A program made the translations under genes and the position numbers. A DNA stretch of 64,000 nucleotides from Schizochytrium sp. TIO01. Taxonomy: Eukaryota > Protista > Bigyra: Labyrinthulomycetes. Below the pieces are notes generated by a model. That model worked only from the letters and a program-made list of their open reading frames with translations, did not search any database and was not told the DNA's origin. This document shows, piece after piece, positions 1 through 55,627 of the stretch (position 1 is the stretch's first letter; each line of letters begins with the position of its first letter). The stretch spans positions 5,496,862 through 5,560,861 of the forward strand of contig SMSO01000025.1 in assembly GCA_004764695.1 (NCBI GenBank). Direction: 5' to 3'.

Positions 1-863
1 CCTTGTATTTGGTCGAGAAGGCCTGCAAGGAGATCTTTGATGAAATCTTGAAGAGCAGACTGAATTGCTTGAAAACGGTTTTCGAACTCTTCGTTTTCAA
101 GTGTAGAGCTCAGCAAGTCCTGGAGCTCTTCAATGAGGTCTTTTGCTTCAGGGCGAATTTCGTGCAATGCATTTGCAATCTGCTCCCCTACGTCTTCAAC
201 GTCTGCCTCGCGTGTTTTCTCACTTGATGTCTTAATTTTGCATGCTAACGAGTGAATAATAGCTCGGACTTCCTCTTTATGGCTCTTTAGTTCTTTATCG
301 CCAAGTGCAAGTAGATCAGAGATCTTGTCTACTACTTCATCGGTCGGTTCTTTTGACTTTGAGGCAAGGTCCTCGCGGAGATCATCGCGTAAATCTCCAG
401 CAGCCTCGCTAGTTGTCTGCGCAGTGACCTTCGCTACTTCCACCCCGATGGCTACCTTCTGGCAGTTCTCCTCAATCCCCTTGACGGAGTTTATTGCACC
501 AGCTTCCACAAGAATGGCAATGGCATCCTTGACCATTCCTTGCACATTTACGTCTTCGATGTCTTCTTTCTCGTTCGCCTCTGCGAGCGTGTTTTGGATA
601 AATTCTTGTAGGCCTTCTAAAGAACTTTTCATTGATGGTGGAGCGTTGCTCAAGGCCCGTGAAATAGGGTCATCCCTGTCAGAATCTGGGGTATCATTGA
701 AGGATTCACGCAAGTTGCTCGCGATGGACTTGACAATCGCATGAACCCGGTCGCGATTCTTCTCAAGATCCGCGTCTCCTCGAATTAGCGATTCTGTGAT
801 GTTCCGGAGTGCCAAACCAGGATCGCACTCCTCAACCACAACCTCGTCCTCGTGGTTCACCAT
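1..863 (-). CDS. Partial CDS (runs off the left edge of the window): acidic, alpha-helical protein with an internal ~159-aa repeat, function unknown
   Basis: Manual translation from ATG at 863 gives 287 open codons to the window edge (MVNHEDEVVVEECDPGLALRNITESLIRGDADLEKNRDRVHAIVKSIASNL...KISDLLALGDKELKSHKEEVRAIIHSLACKI...LQDFIKDLLAGLLDQIQ). It is missing from the ORF track because its stop lies outside the window. The + strand ORFs 3..227 and 325..744 are its antisense shadows. Confidence 0.8.
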   Translation of the reverse strand, partial: MVNHEDEVVVEECDPGLALRNITESLIRGDADLEKNRDRVHAIVKSIASNLRESFNDTPDSDRDDPISRALSNAPPSMKSSLEGLQEFIQNTLAEANEKEDIEDVNVQGMVKDAIAILVEAGAINSVKGIEENCQKVAIGVEVAKVTAQTTSEAAGDLRDDLREDLASKSKEPTDEVVDKISDLLALGDKELKSHKEEVRAIIHSLACKIKTSSEKTREADVEDVGEQIANALHEIRPEAKDLIEELQDLLSSTLENEEFENRFQAIQSALQDFIKDLLAGLLDQIQ

Positions 864-1993
864 GACTACAACGGTGCAACGAGCCTTACAAGTCGAATTT
901 CTCAAATCGGATCCCTCCCTCAACCTACTGCACTTTCGTCGTGGATGATGTATGGAAATAGCCAAGGCTAGCAAGCAAGCCAAGTTGTTGCTCTAGCTCT
1001 TTTTCTGAGGCTTCGTATTCAACCTCCCTCTCGAGTCGCCGAGCAGCAATACAGCAATCAGGTTTTGCAGCAACTTAAATGACCGCAGGGAGCTTCTGCG
1101 CAGCTGAAGAACCCGAAGCTCTCGATGATTCACTTTTGCGCCTCCCGAAGCTATGGGCTTGGAGCGAGTTTGCTGTCTTTATGTTTACTTGGATCTCAGG
1201 CCTCTTACTTTTATAGTAGGTAGCTTTGGGGTCCCATGGTTACTTCATCGTAGTGCTATTTAGATCACCTAGTTACGTAGGTACTTAGTGAGAAGGGAAA
1301 AATATCTGATCAATGAGTTTGGAGATGAGCAGCAAATTCCACAATTCCACGGAGCTGAACGCAGCATTTATGAAATTCGAGATATGCTTTGCAATATCTG
1401 GTACGTGAAAACCAAAATTTTAATGTTAAAGACCAACTATTCATCCACAAAATATTCATTTCTATTATTTCTATGATGAGGACCAAGTCATAAAGGACAG
1501 AAAAGTGCTTCGCTCCCTGCATATACAATAACCCATCAGCCCGCCAGAGACCAATTAAAGGCTACAGAAGAACGTTGATGGAGGCAGAAGATAAATCTTA
1601 TCATTTGGCGCTTTCGTGTTAGCAAACTCTCTACCATATCTCGGAGAAAGTTTCAAGATCAATAGATGCACTTTTAAAATGATAAACTAGGCAACAAAGA
1701 AAGAAAAAAAAAGGGAAAAAACTTGAAAGGGAAAAAAAAGGATCCGTTGAGGTGTATGTTCTGAACTAATATAAATGCCCAGACGAGAGCGCAGCTGCTG
1801 GAGTTCAACATCGCTACCTGCCAGGCAATGCACGAGCTGACTCCTGACAAGTGCTGCCAGCGCCGCCATAACAGCTTGATTCCCGTCGCACTATATCAGC
1901 AAGGAGGGTAAGCTTGTTGTTGTTGCCTTGCGTAAAGCAAGCGCGGTCTGATTTGGTCAAAAGAAATAAACTTAAAACACGTATCAATGCAAA

Positions 1994-4900
1994 ATGAGCT
2001 CACCATCTCCATCATCAAGGTCAGTACAGCGAGCCGAGCTTGTAAACATTGGCTCTGATGCGGTTTTAGAGGAGAAGACAGGCCGTTCAACACCAGCAGA
2101 TTCGAAGATGCCGTCATCAAATAGTAAGCGTGGGAAACGATCGAAACACCAAGCAGAGGGCGCCAAACAGAAGTATGAAATCAGGGACGAAGACGTTGTG
2201 CCACGAAAACATGCGTCTGGATTTTCAAAACTATCAGGCCAGAATCTCTCGAATAAGCTAAGACTTGCACGACTTGGTGGTAATTTATGGAACTCAAACT
2301 TGCCGCAAGCACCCAGCTTGCAAAGCCCTGAGCCGCCTTATCCGACGCCTCATGGAGACCCACTAAGCCCAGATGCATTTACTCGCAAACAACGGCACAA
2401 CCATGACGCAGAAACAGATGATCGGGCCTTGCGTGTGGATCCAGAAGGACAATACGCGCGCCAGACTAAGGAGAAAACCTGGCAGCAAATTGGACGAATT
2501 GAAAGTGCTCTAGAGAGACCTGCAACAAGAAGGGATATCGCGCTACTTGATAAGCAATTCGATCGAGCGGTGCATGCAAGCCAACGCGAAATCCGTCAAA
2601 CTCGTAAGCCGGGTACAGGGCTTATGGCTGAGGCACGAATGGAGCAAGATATTGTCGCAGTTAAAGAGTTTTCGCGAAAACTTGTAGAACGACCTCAAGT
2701 GATGAGCCAAGAAAGTAGTCACGGGGACCATCTCGAAATCCTTCAGGAATCAAGCGAGGGAGAAGACCTCAATGCTATATGTGAAGATTGGGAAGTAGAG
2801 CTAGCCAATGTCCACGGTGTTCAATTTGGTCTTCGATCCAAGCAGCGAGATCTTGAGCTACAAAATATGCTTGCGGCATCCTTCTTTGAAGAGAAATGGT
2901 CCGATTTGATCCTCGGCGAACTACAGTCTCAAGTTACAATTTCATGTCTCGAACAGGGCCAGCTACTAGCAAAGGTTCGTGCTCAACTTGCCATGAGCTT
3001 TTCCACACTTTCAGATGCCCAGAGTCTTTCCTTGCAGGAGCTGCACGACACAGTCCGAGCCATGTTATTCTATAAAGAAAAGGCTTCTGAGCTTGCGCTG
3101 CAGCAACGCACTATTCGCGAAGAGGTTGCAAAGGAGTATCAAACTAAGATTGTGCAAACCGAAGCTCGGGCTCGAGAACGATACGCTGAGTATGAACAGC
3201 AAATCAAACTTGTGAAGGCTTCGCAGAAACGCATGGCGGACACGCTTGCAGCATTGAATGGCATTTATCGCAAAATGCGAGATGATGCAGAGACAATGAG
3301 AAATCTTGATGCAGTGGATGCCTGTGATAAATTAGAAAAGAAACTCATCAAAGCACAGAGCGAGCTTGACGAACTTAGACCCTTACGAGCACAGTGCGAA
3401 GAGCTTACACGCACTGTCGATAGGCAAGCAAGTACTATTGAGGATCAAGTCAAGACTATTGAGAATCTTAAAGAGGAGTTAGAACAACGAAATGGTTTAG
3501 TTCAAAGCCTTATGGACCAACACAGTGCTCACCTCAGCCTTGAAGAGCTCGGCAAAGAACACAGTGCAACAGGAGTCAAACATGCGTCAGATGAGACCTT
3601 TGAGGACTCTGAGGAAGAGGAAGGAAGAGTCTGATGAAGATGATGAGGAAGAAGATGATGAAGAGGCCGATGGAAACTCCGAGGATGAAGAGACAAATGC
3701 AGCAGGTGACCCTGAGGCCGTTGTAGACACCCCCGAAGAGGGTGAGGAAGCTGTACAGGGTGCTCTTGAAACTTCAAAGGCTTCCAAAAAGGGTGGAAAG
3801 AAGAAAAAGAAGGTCGCTAAGAAGGGAGGCAAAGGTGCTGGCAAAGGCAAGAAGAAGAAGAAGGGCACTGGCAAGAAATCAAAGAAAAGCGAGGACACTC
3901 CCTTTATTACCTCGAAGAAACTGCGTAAGACCACTGATACATCTAAGATACCCGACGAGGGAGACATTCGCTTTGGCGTTCCAGGGGCATCCGGGGAAAT
4001 TAGAGAAGGGATGGATCTACCTAGCACAGCTAAAACGTTTCTCTGCCCACGCTGTAATGTGGCATTAGATCGAGCAGGGAATATTGACGAGGCTGCAATG
4101 GCGAATAGTGATAACCGCCTTGCATGCGAGGGGTATCGAATGTTACTGCCCAACCTCATGGGATATCGCCCCGAGCGCTCCCGACAATGGGTTCTGCGGT
4201 GTATGCGCAGCATAATTCGCGCAAAGCGTTGTGCTGATTTCTCAGCAGCTAGAATGGGTAAACCAAAGATGAGATTTCCTGAATTTGTTTACATGTGGTT
4301 TACTCCACGCAAGGAGCGTCTCGATGAGTTGCAGTCTTTTGAGGGTCAAGAAGCCGTATTGCTTGCGAAAGCTGAGGCTGATGAGAGTCGATGGGGCCTT
4401 TACTATGGGTTGAAGCGTTTAGCAAAGGAGCTTCCTGAAGCCAGGGTTTTTTATACCTTTCTTGACGAAAAATACGGTGAGGACGATTTTGCGTTTTACC
4501 TTCACTGTCTGACGATAATGGAGGCTGTTGTGAATGAGCGTCGTGGGAAATTTGATTGGGGTTTTAACACGAATGCATGTGATTACGATGCTATGCATGA
4601 ATTAGAAGAAGAGCAGGGAGGAGCTGATGAAATCGATGACTTCATCTTTGTTGAAATACGCCATGCAGTTGAAGTGACAGAAAGAGTCATGAAGCGGGCC
4701 ACAGAAGACGACTGCAAGCGTGCAGTCAAAACATTGGTAGAAAACGCTGTCCAGGAAGAAATTCGCATCACGCCTACTACAGGTCAGCGAATTATTGATA
4801 TTAACGTTTGTCTTCGGGTCTTGTTGCAAGAATACCGAGATGAACAAGCACACCGCCGTGCAGCTCTACGAGTCATGTTTGGTTGTGCATCCTCTGGGCC

Positions 4901-9248: not shown

Positions 9249-10742
9249 CTAAAGGCTCATCAACATGGGCTTGGACATGTAGGCCTGGAAGACCTGAAGG
9301 TACTGGCCAAGAGTGCGGTCATCCACGACGCGACGGTCAGCGGAAACCTGGACAGTGAGAACGTTGACAACACGCATGTCAGCAGGGTCGTCAGTAGGGC
9401 AGACGAACTCCTGGCGACCGCCACCCACAGCCATAATGGCGGAGTGAGGCGGGCTAATGACGGCAGTGAAGTCATTAATGCCAAACATACCGAGGTTGGA
9501 CACAGCAAAGGAGCCACCTTGGAACTCCTCGAGCTTGAGCTTGTTGCTGCGAGCGCGGCCAGCGAGGTCCTTCATGTCAGCAGAGATCTGCATGACACCC
9601 TTCTGGTCGGTGTTCTTGACGATAGGTGTAATGAGACCAGTGGGTGTAGCAACGGCAACTGCAACGTCTACGGACGAGTTCTGCACAATAGATCCGTCAG
9701 GCTCCACGCGGCAGTTGACGGTGGGCACATCACGAAGAGCAAGCGCGGCTGCCTTGAGGATCATGTCGTTGATCGAAGGTGCCGATCCAAGGGTAGCCTT
9801 GAGCTCCTTGCGCATCTTAAGAATCGCATCAATTTCACAGTCAATGGTGGCATAAAAGTGAGGGCGAGACTGCTTTGACTCTGACAGCCTGCTGGCAATA
9901 ACCTTACGCATGTTGGTGAGCGGGATGTCCTCGTACTCGCGCTCCGGCTCAGACTCCGGAAGTCCGTTCGCAGCGGCTCTGGTAACGCCCTGAGGCTGCT
10001 TCTGCTGGGTCTGCTGCTGAGCCTGAGGCTGCTTCTGCTGGGCCTGCTTTGGCTCCTGAGCTTGCTTCTGGGGTGCGGCAGAGTGCTGATCCACGGGTTT
10101 CTTACCTTCCACGGCGCGAACAGCATCTTCTTTGCTCACAATAGCAGTTCCAGAGGGGCTCTTGGCGGAGCCATGGATCTTTTTGGCATCAACACCGAAG
10201 GTCGCAAGAATCGCAGCAGCCGCAGGGGATATGAGCTGCTTATCAGGCACGGGACCTTCATCCGCAGCAGCTTGTGTTGATGCCGAAGAGGTGGAGGTCG
10301 AAGCTGAAGATTCGGATGAAGTTGAAGGTGTAGATGAGGATTTGGAGGTGAGGAAAGAGAGGTCCATCTTGTTGACAGCCTCTGCGATGTCCTTGGAGTC
10401 AGCGATAACAGCGATGGTCTCTCCCACGGCGATGTCTCCGCCCTCGCCAGCGTTAATGAGGATCTTGGCGAGCACGCCGTCGTCTTGTGCTTCGAAGTCC
10501 ACGGTGGCCTTGTCGGTCTCAATCTCGGCGAGCACGCTGCCAGCCTCGAAGGAGTCCATCTCGCGAAGGTTCCATGCGGCGACGCGGCCGCTCTCCATCG
10601 TCGGAGAGAGTGCCGGGAGAGGCACGGCGCTGGCGCCCTCAGGCAGCTTCTGCGCAGAGCTCATGAGGCGCCAAGAGGATGCCCAGGACAACCGCACGCG
10701 AGCCGCATGGCTGCCGCGCAGAGCTGAAGCCGCACGAAGCAT
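9249..10742 (-). CDS. PDHX: Pyruvate dehydrogenase complex E3-binding protein (component X)-like, mitochondrial
   Basis: Arg/Ala/Ser-rich presequence; one lipoyl domain (PALSPTM...EIETDKATVDFE, lipoyl-Lys); E3-binding domain (ISPAAAAIL...IVSKEDAV); acyltransferase-like core with PHFYATIDC and GGSFAVSNLGMFGINDFTAVI. The active-site motif reads DRRVVDD instead of the E2 DHRxxDG, matching the E3BP pattern (DSRVVDD in mammals). Confidence 0.8.
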   Translation of the reverse strand: MLRAASALRGSHAARVRLSWASSWRLMSSAQKLPEGASAVPLPALSPTMESGRVAAWNLREMDSFEAGSVLAEIETDKATVDFEAQDDGVLAKILINAGEGGDIAVGETIAVIADSKDIAEAVNKMDLSFLTSKSSSTPSTSSESSASTSTSSASTQAAADEGPVPDKQLISPAAAAILATFGVDAKKIHGSAKSPSGTAIVSKEDAVRAVEGKKPVDQHSAAPQKQAQEPKQAQQKQPQAQQQTQQKQPQGVTRAAANGLPESEPEREYEDIPLTNMRKVIASRLSESKQSRPHFYATIDCEIDAILKMRKELKATLGSAPSINDMILKAAALALRDVPTVNCRVEPDGSIVQNSSVDVAVAVATPTGLITPIVKNTDQKGVMQISADMKDLAGRARSNKLKLEEFQGGSFAVSNLGMFGINDFTAVISPPHSAIMAVGGGRQEFVCPTDDPADMRVVNVLTVQVSADRRVVDDRTLGQYLQVFQAYMSKPMLMSL

Positions 10743-10960
10743 GCTTGTTTATTTGGAGGCTGCTGTCGAGCTGCTGCCGGTAGTGTGCTGTCGAGCGGAG
10801 TCCGCAAGGGTCTCGGCTTTCTTTGTTTGCCTTGCTCTGATTCGATCTGGAGATCGAAAATGAGTGAACGAGTTTTAGTTAGTTTTTACTTCTTTTTTTT
10901 TTTTCTTTCTTTCTTAAAAAAATAAAATAAATAAGTAGTAGTCTTTTTTCAATTGGTTAG

Positions 10961-10969
10961 CCCTGGCTA
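10961..10969 (+). repeat. Left terminal inverted repeat CCCTGGCTA, preceded by TSD TTAG (10957-10960)
   Basis: Reverse complement of 15441-15449. Confidence 0.9.
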
Positions 10970-11201
10970 AATTCAAAATGTCCCGAATTATGTCCGCAAA
11001 ATATTTTTGACTAAAATCGCCAGAAAACCCTGTAAAGATCTAAAATCGTAAATTTGATTGTATGATCATGTTGAAACAACTGTTTCCCTAAACTGAGCAC
11101 GATTTCTTTGCAGAAGCAAGCGTATTGAGCTCACGCTACTCGTCCAAAAATTGGCTCACAACCTCGATAAAACGGCCTAATAGGGCAAATAGGCCTTTAG
11201 A

Positions 11202-11228
11202 TTTTCAGGACGTAATACGTCCTGAAAA
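11202..11228. repeat. Subterminal palindrome TTTTCAGGACGTA-A-TACGTCCTGAAAA (probable transposase-binding site)
   Basis: Perfect 13-bp arms with a 1-nt centre; homologous to the palindrome at 15411-15441. Confidence 0.8.
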
Positions 11229-11421
11229 ACTGAACTTTGCATTAGCGAAAACGTATAAGAGTTTGGGTATTTTGGTTAGTTTAATAGTTTAGTTAATATA
11301 AACAATAGTAGTTTATTTTTGCGTTGCTCAAGTCGGAGAAACATCTAAAGATGAAGATTTCGCGATAAATGAAGATTTTATATAAGCTAAATGTAATATT
11401 AATTTTTTGTGTGGATAATTT

Positions 11422-14400
11422 TTATGTATGGAAATGAGGAATCGTAATTTGCTCCTCGCTATGAAATTTGATATTGCAATGCTTACAAATGTAAGCATTG
11501 CAAGTTTGGCACCATCGAGTGGTCTTCCGTGGATTACGATATGGATGGTCTGGCGCCGATCCCCGTTCGCAATCAACACAACACATAATGCAGGCTCCCC
11601 TCTTCTTGAACTTGCCCACGCATTCATGCTGTCCAACTAAACGAGTTTGTAGAAGTTCTGGGAGTCGTGACTTACTGTATTGATACTGTTGCGGCGATTC
11701 TAGCGAGGCTGTAGAAGTAGGCGAAATGGTGTTATCAGTTGCTCTCCAGCAGAATTCTATGTCAGACATGGAACAAGTATTGTCAAATGGGTAAAGGGAT
11801 TCCATTGAGACAACCCTAATTTCTTCTGCGAGACTACTTAGATAGCCTCTATAGCAGCACAGATTTTTGCGTAGCATTGACCATTCCGTAATTGTTTTAC
11901 ACTTCGATGTGAGGTTCCGATGCTCCATTGAGAGGAGCTGATACGCTCGAAACGAGTTGTATAAAATATAGTCAATGAATGTTAAACAAACCAAAGCATT
12001 AGGAGTCAGCTTTGAAGTACGAATGCTCGCTCCATTGATAGTTTTTCTAGTGATATCAACTCCGCCCATCATCTTATTCCAGACACTAACAGTCAAAGGC
12101 AGTAGGCGTTTGCAAGGCGGTGGGGTTCCGTTGACCAGCACGTCGTCACTATGCCTCCGCCAAAGCTGCAAAGCGAGTTCGGCACTGTGTAAATCCACAG
12201 CATAACCCCAGTCTGGTGATTGGTCTGGTGCAAAACGAGGAAACCTACCAAGTTGATTGCCATAAGCAAAGCCCATGTATTCATCACTCAACGCTTTGAA
12301 ATACTCACGCCATGACTGGCGCTGGGCACATGAGACTTTGATTAGCACTCCTTGCATGATTTCCTCAGTTGTGGCATATATAAGGAGGGTGTAAGGGACA
12401 TCTAAAGTAGCTGCATGATGGATACACTGAGTTCGAAACGACGGATTTGGGACTAACGACTCGAACTCACTTGTTCCACATTTGCATTCGTGCCACGCAC
12501 TCTGACCAGCAACTCGAGACTTTAACTCATCTATAGTTTTGGCATTTGTACTTGTTTTGATTTCTAAGGCAAATACATCATCTATAACAAAATTGTTTCC
12601 TTCTAGCTCTGTATTCCTCAAAAGAACAGCTGCACCGTCGGGTGAGTCTGCTACAAATTGGACTTCCCGATTAATAATCAGACCATATTTGCGTAGCTGG
12701 AGAATACAGAATTTATTGGAACTTGCTTTCTTAACCCATCTGGAAAGATCTTTCGCCACGTCTGCCTCATTTTCAATCCCCAAAGCCAGTGGGTTTTTAT
12801 GATTCGAAAACCCATTTTGAATAGGCTTCATAAACCAACTTGGTGTGATTGTTCTAAGAAATGATTTCTGGCGTTCCTCGAAAGTGCATGTATGGTTATC
12901 ATCAATCGTTTCAGAATTGTGCAAGGGAAAGCTGTCCCCAATGTCACTACTGTCACTCATTTCCAGCAGGTCTTGAGTAGTGGACTCCTGAGATGCATGC
13001 TGAGGGTGTATGTCTTCCTGTAAGGAAGATAGTTCTCCGTTTGAGACCGTTTCATGATCTATAGTTCTTGATAGGATGTCTACGATCCGCTTGGCTAGTT
13101 CGATCTTTTTGCCATCAGTCTTTGCACCTACATCCAAAGAAAGTAACTTTTGGATAAGCTCATTTTTGTTCATACGTTGCATCCAGTATGTATATTCAAG
13201 AATAAGACCCTCCCCTTGACGCTTCCTTTTATATTGCTTCTGAGCTCCTTCAGATGAATAAGAAGAACGCTTATTAGGACGGGGGAATAATGAGATAATT
13301 CGTTGCGGGTCAAGACAAGCGAACGATTTCACATCGTGGTGTAAGGCCATAAGCTCATCCGAATGAACGAATGGAGCATTTTTAAAGTTGATACAGGTAA
13401 AAGCACCGGTGCTTGTAATTCTAAATTGCCGAGCCATAAACCAGTCAGGTGTTCTTTGGGAAATTGTCATTGAGAAGATATTGGCGTTCACAAGGTTAAT
13501 TTTATGATTAGCTTGTGCCTTCATCTTATATGTACTCATGTCACACGGCTCTATCTCAATCTCAGCATGTGGAACGCGCTTTACACCACCTGGTGAGTTC
13601 CAATCTACTCCAGCAGGAAGTACTTCGTAACTCCAAACTTGGTCAGCCAAACAACGGTCGTTCGTGATGAGTTGTGCAACTCTATGCTTTCCCGCACCGT
13701 GACGCATCATCATCGCAGCAACAAAATCGCCATTCTGGTATCTTTGAGCGGTGTAGGTGCTTCGACGGCCATTCCTGTTAATGATAGTTTGACTTCCCCT
13801 CACAGGCGTAGCAGGAACTGGTCCTTCAACATCTATAAACGGGAATGACGAGGTCTTGCGACAAGTTCCAAGAAATTTGACTCCCTTTGACTGAAGAATT
13901 TGAGTTATGTTTGTTGCACGATCCATATCCTGAGGTTTCGATAATGCCAGATAACCACGATCAATGAATACACGAAGCTCTGAAGACACAGACGCATCAG
14001 GGCTTTCTCCTGACTCCCCCTCATTCAGAAAATCTATTGCCTTGCTTACAATTTTATGAACAGGTGAGTGGGAAGTCTCTAACCGTGGTACTAGGAGCAG
14101 ACCTGTACCCACAGAGCACACAAGATGTATCACGGGTTTCTGTTTTTTTGTTTTCGTTGGAATGGTACGAATTCCAAAATTCTCCCACTGAGGAGAACCA
14201 TAGGGAAGCTTGTCGTCATCAAGATCGATCCAAGTGGTTTTAGGGACAAAGAACATCTTCACCCAATGGCGCTGAGCAGCACCTCCCATTTCATGGATGA
14301 TCGGACTTGAGGAGCATACTCTAGCCTCGCGTGACCCTTTTGTTGCCCGATTGGACTTGTCCAGGCTCATTGCCTTTCGAACTTTTGAATAGGATACCGT

Positions 14401-14937
14401 ATGGGCTAGATTCCAATGACCTGGTGGGTCCTCAAGACACTCCGAGAACGACTTTCCTGCAACTCGCAGAGAAATTTCAACGAGAAGGTAGGCACGGAAA
14501 TCTTGATCCGTGATAGAAAATGGCGGAGATGCGTTTGAGCTAAGACTATTCAACCATTCCTTAACTGCAATCACCCAGCCTGGCGGCAAACAAATCTTGA
14601 AACTATCAAGCCTGGTAAATTTGTAGTTATTGTCAACACGAAGAACCTTTCGAATCCTTTTAGTAATCTCCGAACTTTCTTGTTGAACCTTGGGGAGCAT
14701 TAATTCGCTTGAGCAATTGTACTTGAGTTGGACTGCGTTCATGCCAAGTTGAGACCCAGATAGGTTGCTGTGGTACTTTGCGCCTTCAGTGGAGTAAGAT
14801 TGAAAGGTCCAGTTTTCATGGCCAGGAGTACTTGCCGATGAACACTCATAGAGATCGTTCTCGTCTTCATCAGAAGAAGACTCATCAGAGGAAATGTAGA
14901 TTGAGTCCTTGTCATTCTCGACGTCATCTAGAGACAT
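11422..14937 (-). CDS. piggyBac-type DDD transposase with inserted YqaJ/lambda-exonuclease-like nuclease and SAP-like domain, C-terminal Cys-rich zinc finger
   Basis: Acidic N-terminus. piggyBac core motifs: WIDLDDDKL (D~240), VFIDRGY (D326), LQSKGVKFLGTCRK, WNKMMGGVD (D961), DYILYNSFRAY, and C-terminal RGACIMC...RKTTRWCQTCNAYICKHCNIKFH. Between D326 and D961: QRTPDWFMARQFRITST, LGIENEA, GLIIN...ADSPDG, LEIKT, FRTQCIHH (YqaJ/lambda-exo motifs) and MNKNELIQKLLSLDVGAKTDGKKIELAKRI (SAP-like). Confidence 0.9.
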   Translation of the reverse strand: MSLDDVENDKDSIYISSDESSSDEDENDLYECSSASTPGHENWTFQSYSTEGAKYHSNLSGSQLGMNAVQLKYNCSSELMLPKVQQESSEITKRIRKVLRVDNNYKFTRLDSFKICLPPGWVIAVKEWLNSLSSNASPPFSITDQDFRAYLLVEISLRVAGKSFSECLEDPPGHWNLAHTVSYSKVRKAMSLDKSNRATKGSREARVCSSSPIIHEMGGAAQRHWVKMFFVPKTTWIDLDDDKLPYGSPQWENFGIRTIPTKTKKQKPVIHLVCSVGTGLLLVPRLETSHSPVHKIVSKAIDFLNEGESGESPDASVSSELRVFIDRGYLALSKPQDMDRATNITQILQSKGVKFLGTCRKTSSFPFIDVEGPVPATPVRGSQTIINRNGRRSTYTAQRYQNGDFVAAMMMRHGAGKHRVAQLITNDRCLADQVWSYEVLPAGVDWNSPGGVKRVPHAEIEIEPCDMSTYKMKAQANHKINLVNANIFSMTISQRTPDWFMARQFRITSTGAFTCINFKNAPFVHSDELMALHHDVKSFACLDPQRIISLFPRPNKRSSYSSEGAQKQYKRKRQGEGLILEYTYWMQRMNKNELIQKLLSLDVGAKTDGKKIELAKRIVDILSRTIDHETVSNGELSSLQEDIHPQHASQESTTQDLLEMSDSSDIGDSFPLHNSETIDDNHTCTFEERQKSFLRTITPSWFMKPIQNGFSNHKNPLALGIENEADVAKDLSRWVKKASSNKFCILQLRKYGLIINREVQFVADSPDGAAVLLRNTELEGNNFVIDDVFALEIKTSTNAKTIDELKSRVAGQSAWHECKCGTSEFESLVPNPSFRTQCIHHAATLDVPYTLLIYATTEEIMQGVLIKVSCAQRQSWREYFKALSDEYMGFAYGNQLGRFPRFAPDQSPDWGYAVDLHSAELALQLWRRHSDDVLVNGTPPPCKRLLPLTVSVWNKMMGGVDITRKTINGASIRTSKLTPNALVCLTFIDYILYNSFRAYQLLSMEHRNLTSKCKTITEWSMLRKNLCCYRGYLSSLAEEIRVVSMESLYPFDNTCSMSDIEFCWRATDNTISPTSTASLESPQQYQYSKSRLPELLQTRLVGQHECVGKFKKRGACIMCCVDCERGSAPDHPYRNPRKTTRWCQTCNAYICKHCNIKFHSEEQITIPHFHT

Positions 14938-15352
14938 GACACACAGCTGACGTTAAACTCAAGCGCCAATGGACCTCTTCGCTGAGGGAAGTGCTGATAG
15001 ATCCCAAGTAGACTAGCAAGTGGACGATGAAGTAAGGTATGATGTACTTTTGTTGGTACTGCTGGCACTACATGCTGGCGCAAGATATTATTGATGTTTA
15101 TCAGTATTAATTGTCTGGTAGAACAGGTACCGTGGGAGAACCTAACGACCATGTGTCAAATACCTGTTAACCTAACCACCACCTAACCGCCACTGAGAAT
15201 GTCATTGTTTGGTCCTAAACTCAACTATCAATCGGAGAATCATGAGAACATGATAACATATGGACAGGTGAGGTCGGGGAGGGTAAACTAAACGAGTTTC
15301 ATCCCGAACAGAGCTAGACTGTTGAATTGATCAATGACTCAAGTAGGTACAT

Positions 15353-15381
15353 ATTTTTCGGGACGTAATAAGTCCTTAAAT
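15353..15381. repeat. Degenerate second copy of the subterminal palindrome (ATTTTTCGGGACGTAATAAGTCCTTAAAT)
   Basis: Left arm identical to that of 15411-15441; right arm decayed. Confidence 0.7.
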
Positions 15382-15410
15382 ACTCTACCGGGAAAATTAA
15401 AGTTTATCCG

Positions 15411-15441
15411 ATTTTTCGGGACGTAATACGTCCCGAAAAAT
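15411..15441. repeat. Perfect 31-bp subterminal palindrome ATTTTTCGGGACGTA-A-TACGTCCCGAAAAAT abutting the right TIR
   Basis: 15-bp arms are exact reverse complements. Confidence 0.88.
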
Positions 15442-15449
15442 AGCCAGGG
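15441..15449 (-). repeat. Right terminal inverted repeat TAGCCAGGG, followed by TSD TTAG (15450-15453)
   Basis: Reverse complement of 10961-10969. Confidence 0.9.
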
Positions 15450-18400
15450 TTAGTTTCGTTCTTTCTTTCCTTTGATTAATTAATTAGTTATTTCTTATAA
15501 AGTTCACTCAGATCATGATGACGAAGAGTGACGGGCGGTGGAATAACAGAGCAAGAGGCACATCAAGATGGGGATCTAAACGGAGTAATAGCGAGCTAAT
15601 AATTGAAGCAACACATGGAGGGAAAGGTTAACAAAGGGAACTGCTTTCATCCAGTCACCTTTAAGTTCGTCGCGCTGATGCTTTAAGACTTTGTTGATGC
15701 ATATAAATATAAATTATATATATATAAAATCTTCTTTAAAATAAAACAAAAGAAAAGAAAGGATGGAAACTTGTAAGAGACCACAGAAAACCAAACCAAA
15801 ATGACTGGAACCATATTATTCTTCTAGCTCGGCGCAGGGCATTAGCAAGTTTTGCTCGAAGGACCATCGCAGCAGCTTTAGGTAATATGCCTCATCAGGA
15901 TCCCAAGTTGTGCTTTGCTTTTTCAGATGTTCTTGCTTGCTGTTCTCTTTCTATAGTGGACTGGACTACTATGCATTCAATTACAACAAAGTCTTGTTTT
16001 TCTTGTTTTGAAGTTCAAGTTATAAAAATCAAAACATATATTCATAAGGCAGTAGAACAGCAAAACTTGATACATCAGCGCCAAACTCGACACAGAAAGG
16101 AGTGAAAGCCGTGAGCAAAGAGCATTCGGAATCTTCGGACGTAGGAAATGCTTATTGTTTACCTTCGTGATTCTCCAATCATCTTTCTAACTTCTATTGA
16201 AGCACGAGAGCCAAAAACCTGCCTGTTTATTCGGTATCGATTCATCCATAACAACGCTACAGTGCTCTAGAGCTTTTGCGGATGGTCCTCCTAACCCTTG
16301 AAATAGGACTCTGCTAGGGACATTTGCGCCTGTGTTTGCCACTAAACATCATAGTTATCCCTTTTTCTCTTTTCTTTTCTTTTCTTTTCTTTTCTGAAAA
16401 AAAGAAACCAAAACATTTTCCTTTCTTCTGATTAAAAGGTGACGAAACATAATACCGCGGTTACGAAGTATAATGTGAAGGCCTTGAAAGCCTGATGTGA
16501 GGCTTAAAGGGAGCTCTGTCGTTGGCTTAACTGCAGCCCGAAACCCTCGCATCACCTCAGCGGCGTCATGGTCGGCGGGTATTTATGCAAGGACTCGGAA
16601 GCGAAGGATATTTATCTACCTTTTTTAGCCCGCGTTCTAAACAAAATCGCAGTGATATTTTTTGCGGGTCTTTTTTATTCTGTAATTTTCTAATTTTCAA
16701 TTTTCAATCTTCAATTTTCAATCATAATAATTAAAAAAAAATAAAAAAAAATATATATATATATATAAAATATAAAATAAAGGGGAGGAAATGCGAAATT
16801 TTGCAGATTAGCCATATCCCTTTCGCATACGCCGTACGGTACGCCTGGTCCTTCGCATGTTTCTCAAATCGCAGCCGCCGCACCGCACCTGCTGTTCCTC
16901 TGCATCCCTCTTTGCCCCCTCTTTCCCCCGCCCTGCTCCAAAGCCACAAGGTTTCCTCCACGGCGCAGATCTGCCTGGCTTCTCCTGGTCCGCTATCATC
17001 GCGCACGCTCTCTCGCCAATTTCTGAGGCGCTCATTCACGACCATACTAACGCTACAGTCTGCTACCGCACTCCTACTACGCCCTCCTTCAACTTCTTCT
17101 TCTTCTTCTGTTGAGCTGTTCCGCTTTGAGGAGTGTTCTTTATTTGTGTTTATTTATAATTTATATAGAGGATGCACTCACTGACAGCTCAAGGTAACCA
17201 AAACCTCCTATCTATCTATTCATCTATCCATCGATTGATGTGTTGACTGATGATTGATGTGTTGATTGATGATTGATGTATTGATTGATTGACGTATTGA
17301 TTGATTGATTGATTCATTCATTTATTTGATTTTGATTTGATTTGATTTATTGATGGCGCCTTCCGCGTCATCCTCCCTATTATTCCCCTTGCGCGGCACA
17401 AGAGCGCGGTTCTGTGGTGGGCCTCTCACAGAACCCGACCACGCGCATTATAAAGTACATCAAGGTTGGAAATGCGCGCGGTCTGGTGGCAAATGGGGCG
17501 ACCCGCGGCGGGCTCCACGAAATCGTTCACGATGGCGGCAAAAGCGGCGACGATGGTCCGCAGGAGCAAAGAAAGACGAGGCAGGGAGGGCGGGCGGAGG
17601 GAGAGAAGGCGGAGAGGCCGCCGCAGAGGGCACGGAGGCGCCGAGGAGGGAGAGGGCGAGCTCCAGCGCGCCGGCCTCGCCTGCTGCGCTGAGGAGAGCG
17701 CGGCGCAGCGGCACAGCACTCCCTGCGTAGCACCTTGTTTGTTTATCGATTCATTTTGTTATTATTATTTTTAATTGAATTTATTTATTTTTTCCATTAT
17801 TTTAATGTCTTTATTTCTTTATAAAGTTTGTTTTCATTTCATTTCTTTCTTGATTGCTCTAAAGTACGATTGTTTGATTGTTTGATACTCTTAAGTCTCT
17901 CCTGCCCAGTGCGGTTCTCGTCCTAGGAAGTGGTATACATAGATACATACATAGATACATACATACATACCTACCCTTTTCTACGCCCATAAGTGGAGAA
18001 TTCCTGCCACAAGTGGGCCTATTAGAGGCGCAAGTAGACTATAGGAGCCTATACTTCACTTGCCCCCGCGCCAAAGATGCCGCAGATGTTCTAGGAGTTC
18101 CCCAAGTTCCACAAGTTCCCCGGCACCGAACTGAAAGAGAGAGAAAGAGGATTCAAAATGCGCCCCTCTTTTGTTATTTGTGGAGGAGTTCTTTGAGGTC
18201 CATGAAAGTGGTTTTTATTTTGTTTTCGACTGATGAAGTAAAAACGAAGAAGTAAGGAGTGCCATCACATATCATCATACACATACATATCATATGCGCG
18301 TCGCCTGTACGTAAGTGCGAGACTTTGAAAGATAGATCGAGGAGAGAATGAAAGATTTACTATGCCGCTTCTTCTTTTTTTGGAGTCGTGCTATGCAGAG

Positions 18401-53000: not shown

Positions 53001-54093
53001 CCTTTTACAATTCGCGATGCAGCGAATGCGTTGAGAGTTCCTGATGGCTCATTCGTTTTTATTCTTCTTTACTGAGTGATTCACTGGTTCATTCATTGGT
53101 TCATTGGTTCATTCATTTGGTGCATTTGCTGCTGCTTCAAACTTCTGTGTTGTCTGTGTGTCGTAAAGGGGCGAAAGTGAAAGAAACAAAGAAAGAAAGA
53201 AAGAAATCAGCGCTACGTACACTTATTAGATGGCTGAGTTTTTTTTGTTTCTGGATTCGAGATTGCAAAGGCCTTTGGAATCCGGCGGTCGATTGGTTCT
53301 TTGCTCGTGTTTGTAAAGCTCAGGCTGAAAGGAGATGTGCTTAAGCGGGGCGGGATATCCTCGACCGTGGACGTCCGTCTGAGTTTGGGCCTTCTTAGGC
53401 TTGGCTTCTCCGAGTAGTTTGCTGATAACGGCAACGCCATGAATTGAGACTTGTGAATCGTGATGCGTGTAAATTACGATAGTTCCGTATTACTAACAGG
53501 GCCAATAGAATCTTTCTACAATCTAGCGGCCGCAGACTTTTAGTCGCCGTTTGCTATTGCTGTTAAGAAGAGTGAACATATCTCGACTTCGAGGTCTTCT
53601 TAATTTTTAGTTAATTTGGGATAAGGCAAAATGAAGAAGAGAAAGAAGGAGAGAAAGAAAGACAGTACAGAGACATAAGGGTCCGCAGCAAAAGGAAGAA
53701 GAGCATGTATAGGGTAGCAAAAACAATAGCTGGCGCTAGCTGTGAAGGAAGCCGAAGAAAGCAGAAAAGTTCCTCTTCTTCTCACTTATCAGAGGAGTAT
53801 TAAAAAATAAAAAATAAAAAATGTATATATATATATGTTTTGTGTTTTTGTTTTTCAAATTAAAGAAATTAATTAAAAAGGCATCAGATAAATCCTTAAA
53901 TAAACACAAAAGAGTAAAATCAGCAAGAGGATAGAGGACCGAGTAAGGCCTGCTACCAGTTAGCATTGATCAAACATAAAGAATATGGCGACTAACTTGG
54001 GAAACAAGCAGGGCTAAAGAAGTAAGAAAGAGGAGAGAAAGAGGCAGAAGGAGATGCTCCTTTCTCTCTAAAAGAATTTGGAGCGAAATTGGA

Positions 54094-54145
<52 letters not shown>

Positions 54146-55313
54146 AGGAAGCAAAAGAAAGAGTGTTTCAGTTAAGTAAAAAGCCGCCCCACCGAGTAAG
54201 CCAAGAGGCCTCACAGGACATAAAATAGCAATATATGTTAAAAAAGTAAAAGTCTCAACAGCAGATCAACTTTTCTGGAAGTCAAGCTTCACACATGAAA
54301 TCTAAAGATAGCATCGACGCCTTTCTTTGAATAGATATCTTATTGAGAATTACAAGCGAAGCCCCTAAACCCGGCGGCCATAGTATCATGGTTGAAGAAT
54401 AAACGAACGACTTTAAAGGTAAAATGATTGAAACAATTCAATTGTCCACTCTTCACATATTTTGTATTTTAAATTTTTACATATACTGAGAAGAATAAAA
54501 CATTTTTTATTTCAATTATTAGTATGAAAATGAAAATGAAAACCGTCAAACTATCAAACTATCAAATGGAAACTAGGGAGAAAGGGTGGGAAAAGATGGG
54601 GGAGTTGCGTATAAAGTTGGAAGCAGGCCCCGTCCCTTGAGGAAAGAAGCACCTTTTAAGTTGCGTCTTTTCAACTACTATCTTACTGTAAAGTGATTCA
54701 TTCATTCATTTATTCATTCATCTTCTTTTTGCGTTTTCTTTTTAATGAACGGCCTTTTTCTGTTTTTTGTTTTTTTTTAATTTTGTTTTGGCAAGTCAGT
54801 CTGTCAGTTCTTCGATCGTTGAAGCGTCCAGCATGGTCAAAGCAAAGAGCTCAAAACGTGTCTGTGCAGAAAAAGGTCACTGCTCCAGGTTCCCACTGCC
54901 TTGGCACTCAGGACAATTGTGTTTTATTTACCTTCGGAGTCGTGAGAATCTTGGCACGAAAGAAATCTTGACATAAGAACGACGATGCTGATATTAAGGA
55001 AACCGCAGTTGCTGTTTCATCCTTCTGTTCGCCTGCCACTTTACACCGACAAGTATTTATTATAAACAGGAATCTCATTCGCATCCTTCTCTTCTCTTTT
55101 CTTTTCCTTTCTTTGTTTTAAAAGGCGGCTAAATAGTTTTCAGGCAACAATTTTAAAAGTTATACATACACATCCCGAACAGAAGCTGGGTAGGCCTTCC
55201 AGTAAAAGTCAGTAAATAATTAATTGAATAAGTAAGTAAGTAAGTAAGTAAGTGAGTAAGTAAGGAAGACATTCATTCATTCAATTCTCTCAGTTCGCAA
55301 AGCAAGAAAGACT

Positions 55314-55394
55314 AACAAACAAACAAACAAACAAAAAGAAAGAAAGAAAGAAAGAAAAAAGAAAAAAAAAAGAAGAAAGAAAGAAGAAGAGAAA

Positions 55395-55438
<44 letters not shown>

Positions 55439-55509
55439 AGAAAGAAAGAAAGAAAGAAAGAAAAAAGAAAGAAAGAAAGAAAAAAGAAAGAAAGAAAGAA
55501 AGAAAGAAA

Positions 55510-55545
<36 letters not shown>

Positions 55546-55549
55546 AAAA

Positions 55550-55589
<40 letters not shown>

Positions 55590-55591
55590 AA

Positions 55592-55623
<32 letters not shown>

Positions 55624-55627
55624 AAAA
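55314..55627. repeat. ~300-bp (AAAG)n polypurine tract preceded by (AAAC)n
   Basis: Read directly; shorter (AAAG)n tracts also occur at ~43327-43378 and ~54093-54146. Confidence 0.95.

What the first reader, a model, noticed from the sequence alone, without database searches (positions are those of the whole stretch)
11422..14937. Two-nuclease transposase: complete YqaJ/lambda-exonuclease inserted inside a piggyBac DDD catalytic core, in an intact element
Seen: one uninterrupted 1171-aa ORF whose piggyBac triad (D~240 in IDLDDDK, D326 in FIDRGY, D961 in MGGVD) is stretched by ~630 aa between D2 and D3. The insert (aa ~494-860, nt ~13458-12360) has the YqaJ/lambda-exo motifs in order: Q..xxW...R..RITS, G..NE (E724), SPDG (D767), E792-I-K794, and a downstream Q motif. 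Both active sites look intact, as do the TIRs, TSD and C-terminal zinc finger, so the element looks recently active. Established: lambda-exo/YqaJ enzymes are PD-(D/E)xK 5'->3' exonucleases, and canonical piggyBac has no such domain. Inference: a cut-and-paste system that processes its own DNA ends or resects the donor break to steer repair, e.g. toward homologous repair that restores the donor copy. It could also serve as a native genome-engineering tool for this lineage. Caveat: YqaJ domains accompany some other eukaryotic DNA transposons (e.g. ISL2EU), and I have an unverified recollection of a Repbase group called piggyBacX with a similar fusion. The architecture may therefore be catalogued, though I know of no mechanistic characterisation.
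Basis: partly seen in the sequence, partly recalled or inferred. Interest (0 to 1): 0.9.

Follow-up and report, generated by a model that had tools for sequence, protein, structure and literature searches.

The report
piggyBac transposon with nested exonuclease
This is an intact, very recently active piggyBac-type jumping gene whose single 1171-residue enzyme has a complete second DNA-degrading enzyme (lambda-exonuclease type, with a small SAP DNA-binding module inside it) built into its catalytic core; many unannotated protist proteins share the design, and it inserts at relaxed nTAn sites rather than strict TTAA.

Summary
Window 11422-14937 (-) is one 1171-aa ORF inside a 4,489-bp element (10961-15449). 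The element has CCCTGGCTA...TAGCCAGGG termini and a TTAG target-site duplication. The genome holds 7 copies, 100% identical, at different sites.

The protein itself has no significant Pfam or PDB sequence hit. A profile of 47 relatives (983 found in public data) matches piggyBat/piggyBac transposases in two separated blocks, SAP domains, and lambda-exonuclease-family nucleases. The AF2 model (pLDDT 83.7) aligns to piggyBac transposase (Z 25.2, residues 83-1047) and to lambda exonuclease (Z 12.7, 202/228 residues, within 489-928).

The nesting is piggyBac[lambda-exo[SAP]]. The insert sits between the beta insertion domain and the helix carrying the third catalytic Asp. D240/D326/D961 and the exonuclease residues R503, E724, D767, E792 and K794 are each kept in at least 90% of relatives at about 20% identity.

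All nine TSDs from two families in this genome are HTAD; only one is TTAA.

I infer, but have not shown, that the exonuclease processes 5' strands at the transposon ends and so frees the element from TTAA.

A RepeatMasker class 'PiggyBac-X' may already catalogue this group. No paper I could search describes the architecture. The scan has already followed up other copies of this element in this genome, with the same reading.

The parts
10957..10960 (.). Left target-site duplication, TTAG
   Evidence: Identity among the 7 copies ends exactly here. The 4 bp on each side of the element are identical within every copy but differ between copies.
10961..15449 (-). Complete 4,489-bp piggyBac-type transposon (7 copies in the genome, 100% identical)
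   Evidence: Boundaries come from comparing copies L001-L007.
10961..10969 (+). Left terminal inverted repeat, CCCTGGCTA (the 5'-CCC terminus typical of piggyBac)
   Evidence: I16
15441..15449 (+). Right terminal inverted repeat, TAGCCAGGG
15450..15453 (.). Right target-site duplication, TTAG
11196..11234 (.). Subterminal palindrome TTTTCAGGACGTA-A-TACGTCCTGAAAA; candidate binding site for a dimer of the C-terminal zinc-finger domain
   Evidence: D1, I2. The role is inferred by analogy with the 19-bp palindromic CRD site of T. ni piggyBac (PMC7351741).
15352..15442 (.). Two more copies of the same about 30-bp palindrome (15355-15384 and 15413-15442), the outer one 7 bp from the right terminus
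   Evidence: D1, I1, I7
11422..14937 (-). Single-exon ORF for the 1171-aa transposase (stop codon included)
   Evidence: The AF2 model has mean pLDDT 83.7 and pTM 0.79.
13588..14820 (-). aa 40-450: piggyBac N-terminal helical (DDBD) part, the first part of the RNase-H-like core with D240 and D326, and the beta-stranded insertion domain (about 361-450)
   Evidence: The profile matches piggyBat 29-364 (mapping). VIA alignment to 6x67 gives Z 25.2. Strands 354-439 appear in the model. DDE_Tnp_1_7 is above Pfam's cut-off in relatives at this position.
13270..13587 (-). aa 451-556: N-terminal part of the lambda-exonuclease/YqaJ domain (Q494, W499, R503, ITS motif)
   Evidence: HMMER aligns this stretch to LHK-Exo 3syy residues 2-67. 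The residues are conserved. The fold range is 454/489..928.
13051..13194 (-). aa 582-629: SAP helix-extended-helix DNA-binding module, inserted inside the exonuclease domain and flanked by disordered linkers (557-577, 630-679)
   Evidence: The profile hits Ku70 SAP 1jjr (E 3e-8), DEK and THO1. Pfam SAP is above cut-off in 13/42 relatives and maps to window residues 584-621. The model has helices 591-601 and 611-628.
12133..12885 (-). aa 685-935: PD-(D/E)xK core of the lambda-exonuclease domain (G720..N723-E724, S765-P-D767-G, E792-I-K794, R835/Q837/H840)
   Evidence: VIA: lambda exo 3sm4_B Z 12.7, LHK-Exo Z 11.7, R354 Z 11.4. The profile matches R354 over residues 746-795. This is the best-conserved region of the protein.
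11788..12132 (-). aa 936-1050: return to the piggyBac core; W953-N954...G-G-V-D961 (third catalytic Asp) and the C-terminal helices of the DDBD
   Evidence: HMMER aligns this stretch to T. ni piggyBac 433-533, with D961 opposite D447, and to piggyBat 409 onward. The roles of D447 and Y439/N440 are taken from PMC7351741.
11425..11667 (-). aa 1091-1171: C-terminal Cys/His cross-brace zinc-finger domain (C1116, C1119, C1143, C1146, C1151, C1154, H1159)
   Evidence: Aligned to the piggyBat C-terminus. Pfam zf-Tnp_2 is weak, in 3/42 relatives. The residues are conserved.

Best explanation
Window 10961-15449 is an autonomous, recently active DNA transposon of a divergent piggyBac lineage. Its one protein is a three-level nested fusion. 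A piggyBac DDD transposase (D240, D326, D961; C-terminal zinc finger) is interrupted by a complete, catalytically intact lambda-exonuclease/YqaJ-type PD-(D/E)xK nuclease. The interruption lies between the beta insertion domain and the helix bearing the third Asp. The nuclease is in turn interrupted by a SAP DNA-binding module. These points are shown here: the architecture, the joint conservation of both active sites across a large protist family, the mobility, and the use of 4-bp HTAD targets rather than strict TTAA. The mechanism is inferred, at roughly 40% for this specific version. The DDD core does the piggyBac chemistry at the 3' ends. The exonuclease is tethered next to the residues that hold the 4 flanking nucleotides, and it removes the donor-derived 5' nucleotides from the excised or newly joined transposon ends. 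The gap is then filled from the new target. This would free the element from needing the old and new target sites to be the same palindromic TTAA.
For: ORF and copies: the ORF is real. There are 7 copies at 100% identity over 4,489 bp, each with its own perfect 4-bp TSD. Other sequencing samples hold the element with different flanks.
Family: 983 relatives at E<=1e-3, from a diatom and Plasmodiophora and an oomycete-labelled cluster.
Sequence profiles: piggyBat 9c0f E 8.9e-12 in two blocks (window aa about 7-389 and 951-1163). T. ni piggyBac E 1.6e-7, with D961 opposite D447. SAP domains down to E 3e-8. LHK-Exo and R354 at about 6e-4 on the exonuclease motifs.
Pfam on relatives: DDE_Tnp_1_7 and SAP pass the curated cut-off at the homologous positions.
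Fold: 6x67 Z 25.2 (372/478 aligned); lambda exo Z 12.7 (202/228 aligned).
Conservation: both catalytic sets are kept in about 40 of 47 relatives at about 20% identity. The exonuclease core is the most conserved region.
For the mechanism: 9/9 TSDs have central TA and variable outer bases, only 1/9 is TTAA, and all 9 pairs are perfect duplicates. So donor-derived overhang bases did not persist at these 9 insertions. In canonical piggyBac the excised ends carry 4-nt TTAA 5' overhangs, and Y439/N440 beside the insertion domain contact those bases (PMC7351741). Here W953/N954 are conserved and the exonuclease is inserted about 20 residues upstream of them. R503 is conserved at the position of LHK-Exo's Arg in the Q..W...R..T(A/S)S motif. 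From my memory of the lambda-exonuclease literature, that Arg is the 5'-phosphate-binding residue.
Against: No biochemical data exist for any family member. Host FEN1 or gap repair could trim mismatched 5' overhangs without a dedicated domain. The Pfam YqaJ model stays below its gathering score in every relative scanned (best 15.6 bits against 22), so exonuclease membership rests on fold and motifs. TSD statistics come from only 9 insertions of 2 families in one genome. I could not obtain termini for relatives elsewhere. Expression is only suggested: the two runs that look like RNA are labelled RNA by guess. I had no model coordinates, so the distance between the two active sites is not measured.
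Confidence: 0.8

Rival explanations
1. The architecture is the same, but the exonuclease acts on the donor chromosome. It resects the double-strand break left by excision, so repair goes through homologous recombination from the sister or homologue. That restores the element at the donor site and makes transposition effectively replicative.
For: Lambda exonuclease in its native setting makes 3' tails for recombination (established knowledge). The element reached 7 identical copies. The SAP module, found in Ku70 and other chromatin and repair proteins, could tether the enzyme to chromosomal DNA.
Against: piggyBac excision leaves complementary 4-nt overhangs for any directly duplicated TSD, so the donor can be sealed without resection (PMC7351741). 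This reading does not explain the relaxed target site. Copy-number gain is common to all successful transposons.
Confidence: 0.25
2. The PD-(D/E)xK domain acts as an endonuclease. It cuts the 5' (non-transferred) strand or opens the hairpin, as the restriction-enzyme-like TnsA does beside the DDE protein TnsB in Tn7. The DDD site would then handle only the 3' ends.
For: The structural neighbours include nucleases from the wider family: Cas4 SSO0001 Z 8.8, R354 Z 11.4, MGME1 Z 8.7, Dna2 Z 7.5. From my own knowledge, several of these also have endonuclease or flap activity. A 5' cut exactly at the transposon end would also explain why donor bases are not carried to new HTAD sites.
Against: The closest folds are the processive exonucleases: lambda exo Z 12.7 and LHK-Exo Z 11.7. 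The Q..W...R..T(A/S)S motif with its Arg is kept. The piggyBac residues that hold the hairpin bases, W953/N954 (Y439/N440 in T. ni), are conserved, which suggests the hairpin route is retained.
Confidence: 0.2
3. The exonuclease-like insert is catalytically inert and serves only as a DNA-binding or oligomerisation scaffold.
For: No activity has been measured. Some paralogues in this genome have lost the catalytic residues yet keep long ORFs.
Against: E724, D767, E792, K794, R503 and Q837 are each kept in at least 90% of 47 relatives at about 20% overall identity, and this region is the most conserved in the protein. The paralogues that lost them also lack transposon termini.
Confidence: 0.04
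4. The ORF is a chance chimera, for example a nested insertion or an assembly artefact, and is not a functional protein.
For: The window protein has no direct Pfam hit.
Against: There are seven identical copies with TSDs at independent loci. The element is present in 20 runs of 10 studies. Hundreds of relatives share the domain order. The single-chain model is confident.
Confidence: 0.01

Closest known systems
Canonical piggyBac / piggyBat transposons (T. ni piggyBac, PDB 6x67; piggyBat, 9c0f)
   Same: RNase-H-like DDD core with a beta insertion domain, helical DDBD, C-terminal cross-brace zinc finger, 5'-CCC...GGG-3' termini, 4-bp TSD with central TA, and subterminal palindromes.
   Different: The D2-to-D3 spacing is 635 aa rather than about 101 aa, because an about 485-aa lambda-exo+SAP module is inserted just before the D3 helix. 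The target is HTAD (1/9 TTAA) rather than TTAA. The window protein does not reach Pfam DDE_Tnp_1_7 significance by itself.
KolobokE lineage of Kolobok transposons
   Same: [quoted passage not shown]
   Different: It belongs to a different superfamily. There the nuclease lies downstream of the transposase domain, not nested inside the catalytic core.
ISL2EU transposons
   Same: A DDE transposon accompanied by a YqaJ exonuclease domain (PMC4122938).
   Different: The YqaJ protein is a separate ORF in a different superfamily (IS4/PIF-related, with a THAP domain), not an intramolecular insertion.
Tn7 TnsA/TnsB
   Same: A functional analogy only: a PD-(D/E)xK-fold nuclease working with a DDE transposase on the two strands of each transposon end (established knowledge).
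   Different: In Tn7 these are two separate bacterial proteins, and TnsA is a restriction-endonuclease-like enzyme rather than a lambda-exo-type one. No homology of the system is implied.
RepeatMasker/Dfam class 'DNA/PiggyBac-X'
   Same: The label exists and is applied to repeats of Plasmodiophora brassicae (bioRxiv 10.1101/2025.07.30.667784). That organism encodes a member of this protein family (P0025/P0151).
   Different: I could not inspect any PiggyBac-X consensus, so whether that class equals this architecture is unverified. No searchable paper describes its domain content.
Lambda exonuclease (Red alpha) / LHK-Exo / Mimivirus R354
   Same: The fold (Z 11.4-12.7) and the Q..W...R..T(A/S)S, G..NE, SPDG and ExK motifs.
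   Different: Those are free-standing phage, bacterial or viral enzymes. Here the domain is split by a SAP insertion and embedded in a transposase. Its oligomeric state is unknown.

Membership tests
piggyBac superfamily (transposase homology) | RNase-H-like DDD catalytic core homologous to D268/D346/D447 of T. ni piggyBac | tested here: met
   Profile against PDB: 9c0f E 8.9e-12 and 6x67 E 1.6e-7, with D961 aligned to D447. VIA Z 25.2, 372/478 aligned. D240/D326/D961 are >=90% conserved.
piggyBac superfamily | Pfam DDE_Tnp_1_7 above the gathering score | tested here: inconclusive
   The window protein has no hit. Relatives P0040 (40.7 bits) and P0043 (28.3 bits) pass the 22.4-bit cut-off at the homologous position.
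piggyBac superfamily | [quoted passage not shown] | tested here: not met
   The 4-bp length is met and central TA is 9/9, but only 1/9 TSDs is TTAA. The TSDs are ATAT, ATAA x2, TTAA, TTAG, CTAT, CTAA x2 and CTAG, which is HTAD. I treat strict TTAA as a typical property, not the defining one. Membership rests on transposase homology, and this is the main reason for calling the element a variant.
piggyBac superfamily | 5'-CCC...GGG-3' termini with short TIRs | tested here: met
   CCCTGGCTA/TAGCCAGGG in the window family and CCCTGGATA in the L009/L010 family.
piggyBac superfamily | C-terminal cysteine-rich cross-brace zinc finger (CRD) | tested here: met
   The Cys/His columns are >=90% conserved. 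The region aligns to the piggyBat C-terminus. Pfam zf-Tnp_2 is weak, in 3/42 relatives.
Lambda-exonuclease / YqaJ PD-(D/E)xK nucleases | Lambda-exonuclease fold | tested here: met
   3sm4_B Z 12.7 with rmsd 3.7 and 202/228 aligned. 3syy Z 11.7 with 178/194 aligned. 5yeu Z 11.4. Foldseek probability is 1.00 with TMt 0.48-0.49.
Lambda-exonuclease / YqaJ PD-(D/E)xK nucleases | Catalytic motifs in order: Q..W...R..T(A/S)S, G..(N)E, (S)PD(G), ExK, Q motif | tested here: met
   All are present in the window protein and kept in about 44/47 relatives. The N-terminal motif and the SxDG region align with LHK-Exo and R354 in HMMER output.
Lambda-exonuclease / YqaJ PD-(D/E)xK nucleases | Pfam YqaJ (PF09588) above the gathering score | tested here: not met
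   The whole-protein scan of the window protein, listing hits up to E 1, shows none for YqaJ. 5/42 relatives hit with a best E of 0.006. P0044 scores 15.6 bits against a cut-off of 22. So this is a remote branch, recognised by fold and motifs only.
Lambda-exonuclease / YqaJ PD-(D/E)xK nucleases | Mg-dependent 5'-3' exonuclease activity on 5'-phosphorylated duplex ends; toroidal trimer | not testable with these tools
   This needs biochemistry or a structure. No oligomer prediction was run.
SAP domain | Pfam SAP above the gathering score at the position in question | tested here: inconclusive
   The window protein is not significant by itself. 13/42 relatives have SAP (best 2.2e-10; P0025 scores 35.6 bits against 23.9), mapping to window residues 584-621. 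The family profile hits Ku70 SAP at E 3e-8. The model shows helix-linker-helix at 591-628.
RepeatMasker/Dfam 'PiggyBac-X' | Similarity to a PiggyBac-X consensus or seed | not testable with these tools
   No Dfam or Repbase library is available here. I found only the label's use in P. brassicae.

The most novel reading that the evidence does not exclude
A self-contained two-nuclease transposase in which a built-in 5'-3' exonuclease removes the donor-derived 5' overhangs of piggyBac ends. This would uncouple integration from the palindromic TTAA and create a naturally TTAA-independent piggyBac. It would be a new end-processing step in eukaryotic cut-and-paste transposition and a template for engineering piggyBac tools with relaxed targets.
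Probability: 0.3. Interest if true: 0.8.

Novelty: new variant of a known kind. Interest (0 to 1): 0.65.

Why it matters
piggyBac is one of the most used genome-engineering transposons, and its defining limits are TTAA targeting and a single DDD active site. Here a large natural lineage, found in diatoms, oomycetes, plasmodiophorids and this stramenopile, has carried a second, strictly conserved nuclease inside the catalytic core over long evolutionary distances, and it inserts at HTAD sites. That makes a concrete question testable: how the 5' strands and donor-derived overhangs are handled in piggyBac-type transposition. It also offers an intact, evidently active element, with 7 identical copies, for use as a native genetic tool in a lineage that has few. 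Finally, it is a clear case of three-level domain nesting that standard Pfam annotation misses entirely. The deposited relatives are named 'hypothetical' or 'SAP domain-containing protein'.

Tried and rejected
- Direct Pfam and PDB sequence searches with the window protein gave nothing significant. A 5-paralogue profile gave only noise against PDB and one weak zf-Tnp_2 hit.
- The search for homologous proteins (word-indexed) found only the protein itself. The exhaustive HMMER search was needed.
- A profile of the exonuclease core built from fragment hits (A4), and the isolated core sequence, gave no lambda-exo sequence hit in PDB. The fragments mostly cover the region after ExK.
- Non-autonomous derivatives: none found. 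Only the 7 copies, one old copy and two end fragments exist. The old copy L008 has a degraded terminus, so its TSD is unreadable.
- Internal control with a mobile canonical piggyBac: the genome's three DDE_Tnp_1_7 genes have no termini or TSDs, so no control was possible.
The second scan gave 5 loci, none with recognisable CCC...GGG termini.
- Literature: 'piggyBacX' appears in 0 papers. 'PiggyBac-X' appears in 1 paper, as a label only. Combinations of piggyBac with YqaJ, lambda exonuclease, SAP, Kolobok or ISL2EU turn up no description of this fusion.
- I did not run a complex prediction, because the report claims no binding pair. I had no access to model coordinates, so the geometry between the two active sites is not measured.
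- The host's identity was not tested.


Full report
**1. The observation**

Window 11422-14937 on the minus strand is one uninterrupted ORF of 1171 aa. The same protein is encoded 7 times in this 64-Mb, 37-contig genome at 100% identity. There is also one older copy (93-97%) and several diverged paralogues at 33-40% identity with long open frames.

Comparing the copies with their flanks puts the boundaries of identity at window 10961 and 15449, a 4,489-bp unit. It starts CCCTGGCTA and ends TAGCCAGGG. Each copy is flanked by its own perfect 4-bp duplication: ATAT, ATAA, TTAA, TTAG (the window copy), ATAA, CTAT, CTAA. Zero differences among 7 x 4.5 kb means the copies are very young.

**2. What the protein is**

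Alone, the protein has no significant Pfam hit and no PDB sequence hit. The word-indexed protein search finds only the protein itself.

The exhaustive HMMER search, run with a profile of five paralogues, finds 983 relatives at E<=1e-3, of which 75 are at E<=1e-30. Many are 1,000-1,400 aa long. Named sources are Skeletonema menzelii and Plasmodiophora brassicae ('hypothetical protein' and 'SAP domain-containing protein'). An ESM-Atlas cluster of 56 eukaryotic members has Oomycota as its commonest taxon.

In an alignment of 47 full-length relatives, at about 20% identity to the window protein, these columns are conserved in at least 90%:
- D240, D326, R327, T358
- Q494, W499, R503
- W701, G720, N723, E724, G752
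- S765, D767, E792, K794
- R835, Q837, H840
- W953, N954, D961
- six Cys and one His at the C-terminus

A profile of that alignment, searched against PDB sequences, gives these matches (mapped to window residues):

| PDB match | E-value | Window residues |
|---|---|---|
| piggyBat transposase 9c0f | 8.9e-12 | two blocks, about 7-389 and 951-1163 |
| T. ni piggyBac 6x67 | 1.6e-7 | 947-1038; ...WNKMMGGVD961 lies opposite ...YNQTKGGVD447 |
| SAP domains (Ku70, DEK, Hcc-1, THO1) | down to 3e-8 | within 561-691 |
| LHK-Exo 3syy | 5.6e-4 | 493-561 (QRTxxWFxxRxxxxT(A/S)S motif) |
| Mimivirus R354 | 6e-4 | 746-795 (SPDG through ExK) |

Scanning the relatives one by one against Pfam gives SAP in 13/42, DDE_Tnp_1_7 in 5/42, YqaJ in 5/42 and zf-Tnp_2 in 3/42. 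DDE_Tnp_1_7 and SAP exceed Pfam's curated cut-offs. YqaJ does not: it scores 15.6 bits in P0044 against a cut-off of 22 (best E among the relatives 0.006). All of these hits map to the homologous window positions.

**3. Fold**

AlphaFold2 with the 47-sequence alignment gives mean pLDDT 83.7 and pTM 0.79. Low confidence is confined to residues 1-39, 557-577, 630-679 and 1052-1090.

Foldseek against PDB ranks piggyBac, Tn5 and piggyBat transposases first. Lambda exonuclease, LHK-Exo, Cas4 and MGME1 follow.

VIA-align gives these alignments:

| Structure | Z | Aligned | Model range |
|---|---|---|---|
| piggyBac 6x67_C | 25.2 (rmsd 3.8) | 372/478 | 83-1047 |
| piggyBat 9c0f_C | 23.1 | 360/466 | 86-1044 |
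| lambda exonuclease 3sm4_B | 12.7 (rmsd 3.7) | 202/228 | 489-928 |
| LHK-Exo 3syy | 11.7 | 178/194 | 496-898 |
| Mimivirus R354 5yeu | 11.4 | 219/381 | 467-911 |

Both folds are therefore recovered from one chain, the exonuclease inside the transposase.

The published piggyBac structure places the catalytic domain at 263-457, interrupted after the fifth strand by a beta insertion domain at 372-433. D447 sits on the following helix, and Y439/N440 contact the flanking TTAA bases (PMC7351741). In the model, D326 is followed by a beta-rich stretch at 354-439. The exonuclease module occupies about 451-935. Then comes PPPCKRLLPLTVSVW953N954KMMGGVD961.

So the insert lies at the C-terminal edge of the insertion domain, about 20 residues before the residues that hold the four flanking nucleotides. 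The exonuclease itself is split between its N-terminal motif region (451-556) and its core (685-935) by two disordered linkers and a SAP helix-linker-helix (about 584-626). The architecture is piggyBac[lambda-exo[SAP]].

**4. Is the second nuclease functional?**

About 40 of the 47 relatives keep all three Asp residues together with R503, E724, D767, E792, K794 and Q837. The exonuclease core has the most columns conserved at >=80% (22) of any region of the protein.

The exceptions are informative. Three own-genome paralogues, L011 (=P0002), L013 (=P0003) and L014, have substitutions in one or both sites. They also show no CCC...GGG termini or TSDs. By contrast the L009/L010 family keeps both sites, has CCCTGGATA termini, and has TSDs CTAA and CTAG. 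This is the pattern expected if both active sites are needed for mobility. It is correlative evidence only.

**5. Mobility and expression**

There are no MITE-like derivatives.

Twenty public runs from 10 studies hold the element nearly unchanged. In two DNA runs the element's ends continue into sequences unlike the window's flanks. This shows different insertion sites in other samples (table 7).

Two runs guessed to be RNA have contigs covering 11403-15452 and 11508-14738. They have little or no coverage of the 3' non-coding 10961-11443. The DNA runs cover that part fully (tables 2 and 8). This fits a minus-strand transcript ending just after the stop codon. The run type is a guess, so I call expression suggested, not shown.

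**6. Target site**

Nine insertions from two families give the TSD consensus HTAD. Position 1 is A3/T2/C4. Positions 2-3 are TA in 9/9. Position 4 is A5/T2/G2. Only one is TTAA, and no extended flank pattern is visible. Each of the 9 TSD pairs is a perfect duplicate.

**7. Mechanism (inferred)**

Canonical piggyBac excises through hairpins that are opened to leave 4-nt TTAA 5' overhangs on the transposon. These overhangs match the TTAA gap at the next target (PMC7351741).

If this family uses the same chemistry with HTAD targets, the overhang brought from the old site will usually mismatch the new site at its outer positions. Yet all 9 TSD pairs are perfect, so donor-derived bases are not retained. 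That calls for removal of 5' nucleotides. The removal could happen after joining, by exonuclease or flap trimming followed by fill-in. Alternatively, a 5' cut exactly at the transposon end would have the same effect.

Three points fit such a role:
- the enzyme type: lambda exonuclease digests duplex DNA 5' to 3' (established knowledge);
- the conserved Arg at the position of the lambda-exonuclease 5'-phosphate-binding residue (from memory of the literature);
- the physical insertion of the domain beside the residues that bind the flanking bases.

I put about 40% on 5'-overhang trimming, about 20% on a TnsA-like 5'-strand or hairpin cleavage, and about 25% on resection of the donor break to favour homologous repair. 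Host enzymes could do the trimming, so the TSD argument is suggestive only.

**8. Comparison with what is known**

Lambda-exo/YqaJ nucleases are known companions of other eukaryotic DDE transposons. ISL2EU carries one as a separate ORF (PMC4122938). KolobokE carries one downstream of the transposase domain (PMC9587614). Neither is a piggyBac, and neither has the nuclease nested in the catalytic core.

The term 'piggyBacX' occurs in no searchable paper. 'DNA/PiggyBac-X' occurs once, as a RepeatMasker label for Plasmodiophora brassicae repeats, and that species has a family member. The lineage may therefore already be catalogued in Repbase or Dfam. I could not check this, and I found no description of the architecture or any mechanistic work.

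I file the element as a divergent lineage of the piggyBac superfamily on transposase homology, termini and CRD. I note that the strict-TTAA feature was tested and is not met.

**9. Status within the scan**

Earlier notes show that other copies of this same element in this genome were already followed up, with the same architectural conclusion. The TTAG TSD of this very stretch was also noted. The following points may or may not be in those reports, of which I saw only short excerpts:
- the HTAD statistics over two families;
- the positional reading against the published piggyBac structure;
- the link proposed between relaxed TSDs and the exonuclease;
- the absence of termini in the catalytically degenerate paralogues;
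- the read-based evidence for insertion polymorphism.

**10. Limits**

Metagenome loci gave no termini. No model coordinates were available. The host's identity was not tested.

Noticed in passing
G000:C6:1872410-1876033 (L011), G000:C30:1537840-1541466 (L013), G000:C30:2808046-2809254 region (L014): Three diverged paralogues of the transposase keep long intact ORFs (1244, 1305 and 1232 aa) and the zinc finger. They have lost residues of the DDD site, the exonuclease site or both, and they show no CCC...GGG termini or TSDs. They are candidates for domesticated genes or old immobile copies.
   Followed up: partly
G000:C31:7606601-7607800 (L015/L018), G000:C13:2563422-2564621 (L016/L019), G000:C13:6427843-6428133 (L017/L020): Three genes match Pfam DDE_Tnp_1_7 above the cut-off. 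In two the match is contiguous over the whole profile, with no exonuclease insert; in the third only profile positions 2-95 match. They lie in ORFs of 986, 846 and 1060 aa with extra N-terminal regions and no recognisable TIRs or TSDs. They are probably domesticated piggyBac-derived genes.
   Followed up: partly
window 9249-10742 (-): An intronless 497-aa dihydrolipoamide acetyltransferase (pyruvate dehydrogenase E2)-like gene. The transposon's left end lies 219 bp upstream of its start codon, in the same orientation, so the insertion sits in that gene's 5' region.
   Followed up: no
window 10979-11000, 11196-11234, 15352-15442: About 30-bp palindromes (TTTTCGGGACGTA-A-TACGTCCCGAAAA) occur once inside the left end and twice at the right end, with two tandem half-sites next to the left terminus. 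The second family (L010) has analogous GTCTACG...CGTAGAC palindromes. This layout is asymmetric, like the left and right ends of T. ni piggyBac.
   Followed up: partly
G000:C24:5429136-5432648: A second identical copy lies about 79 kb away on the same contig, just upstream of this window.
   Followed up: no
window 11164, 14164 (and 15086, 15258, 15377): Other samples share a few fixed differences from the window copy: T>C at 11164, G>A at 14164, and a 3-nt deletion at 15086. Run X3 also holds a minority variant contig. Slightly different subfamilies therefore circulate among samples that carry different organism labels.
   Followed up: no
window 2001-4000 and 54001-56000: Both stretches have strong AT skew (0.25 and 0.315) against a background near 0. 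I did not examine them.
   Followed up: no
window 10132-10863 (+) and 10136-10522 (-): Long ORFs overlap the E2 gene in other frames and on the opposite strand. They are most likely by-products of its composition, not genes.
   Followed up: no
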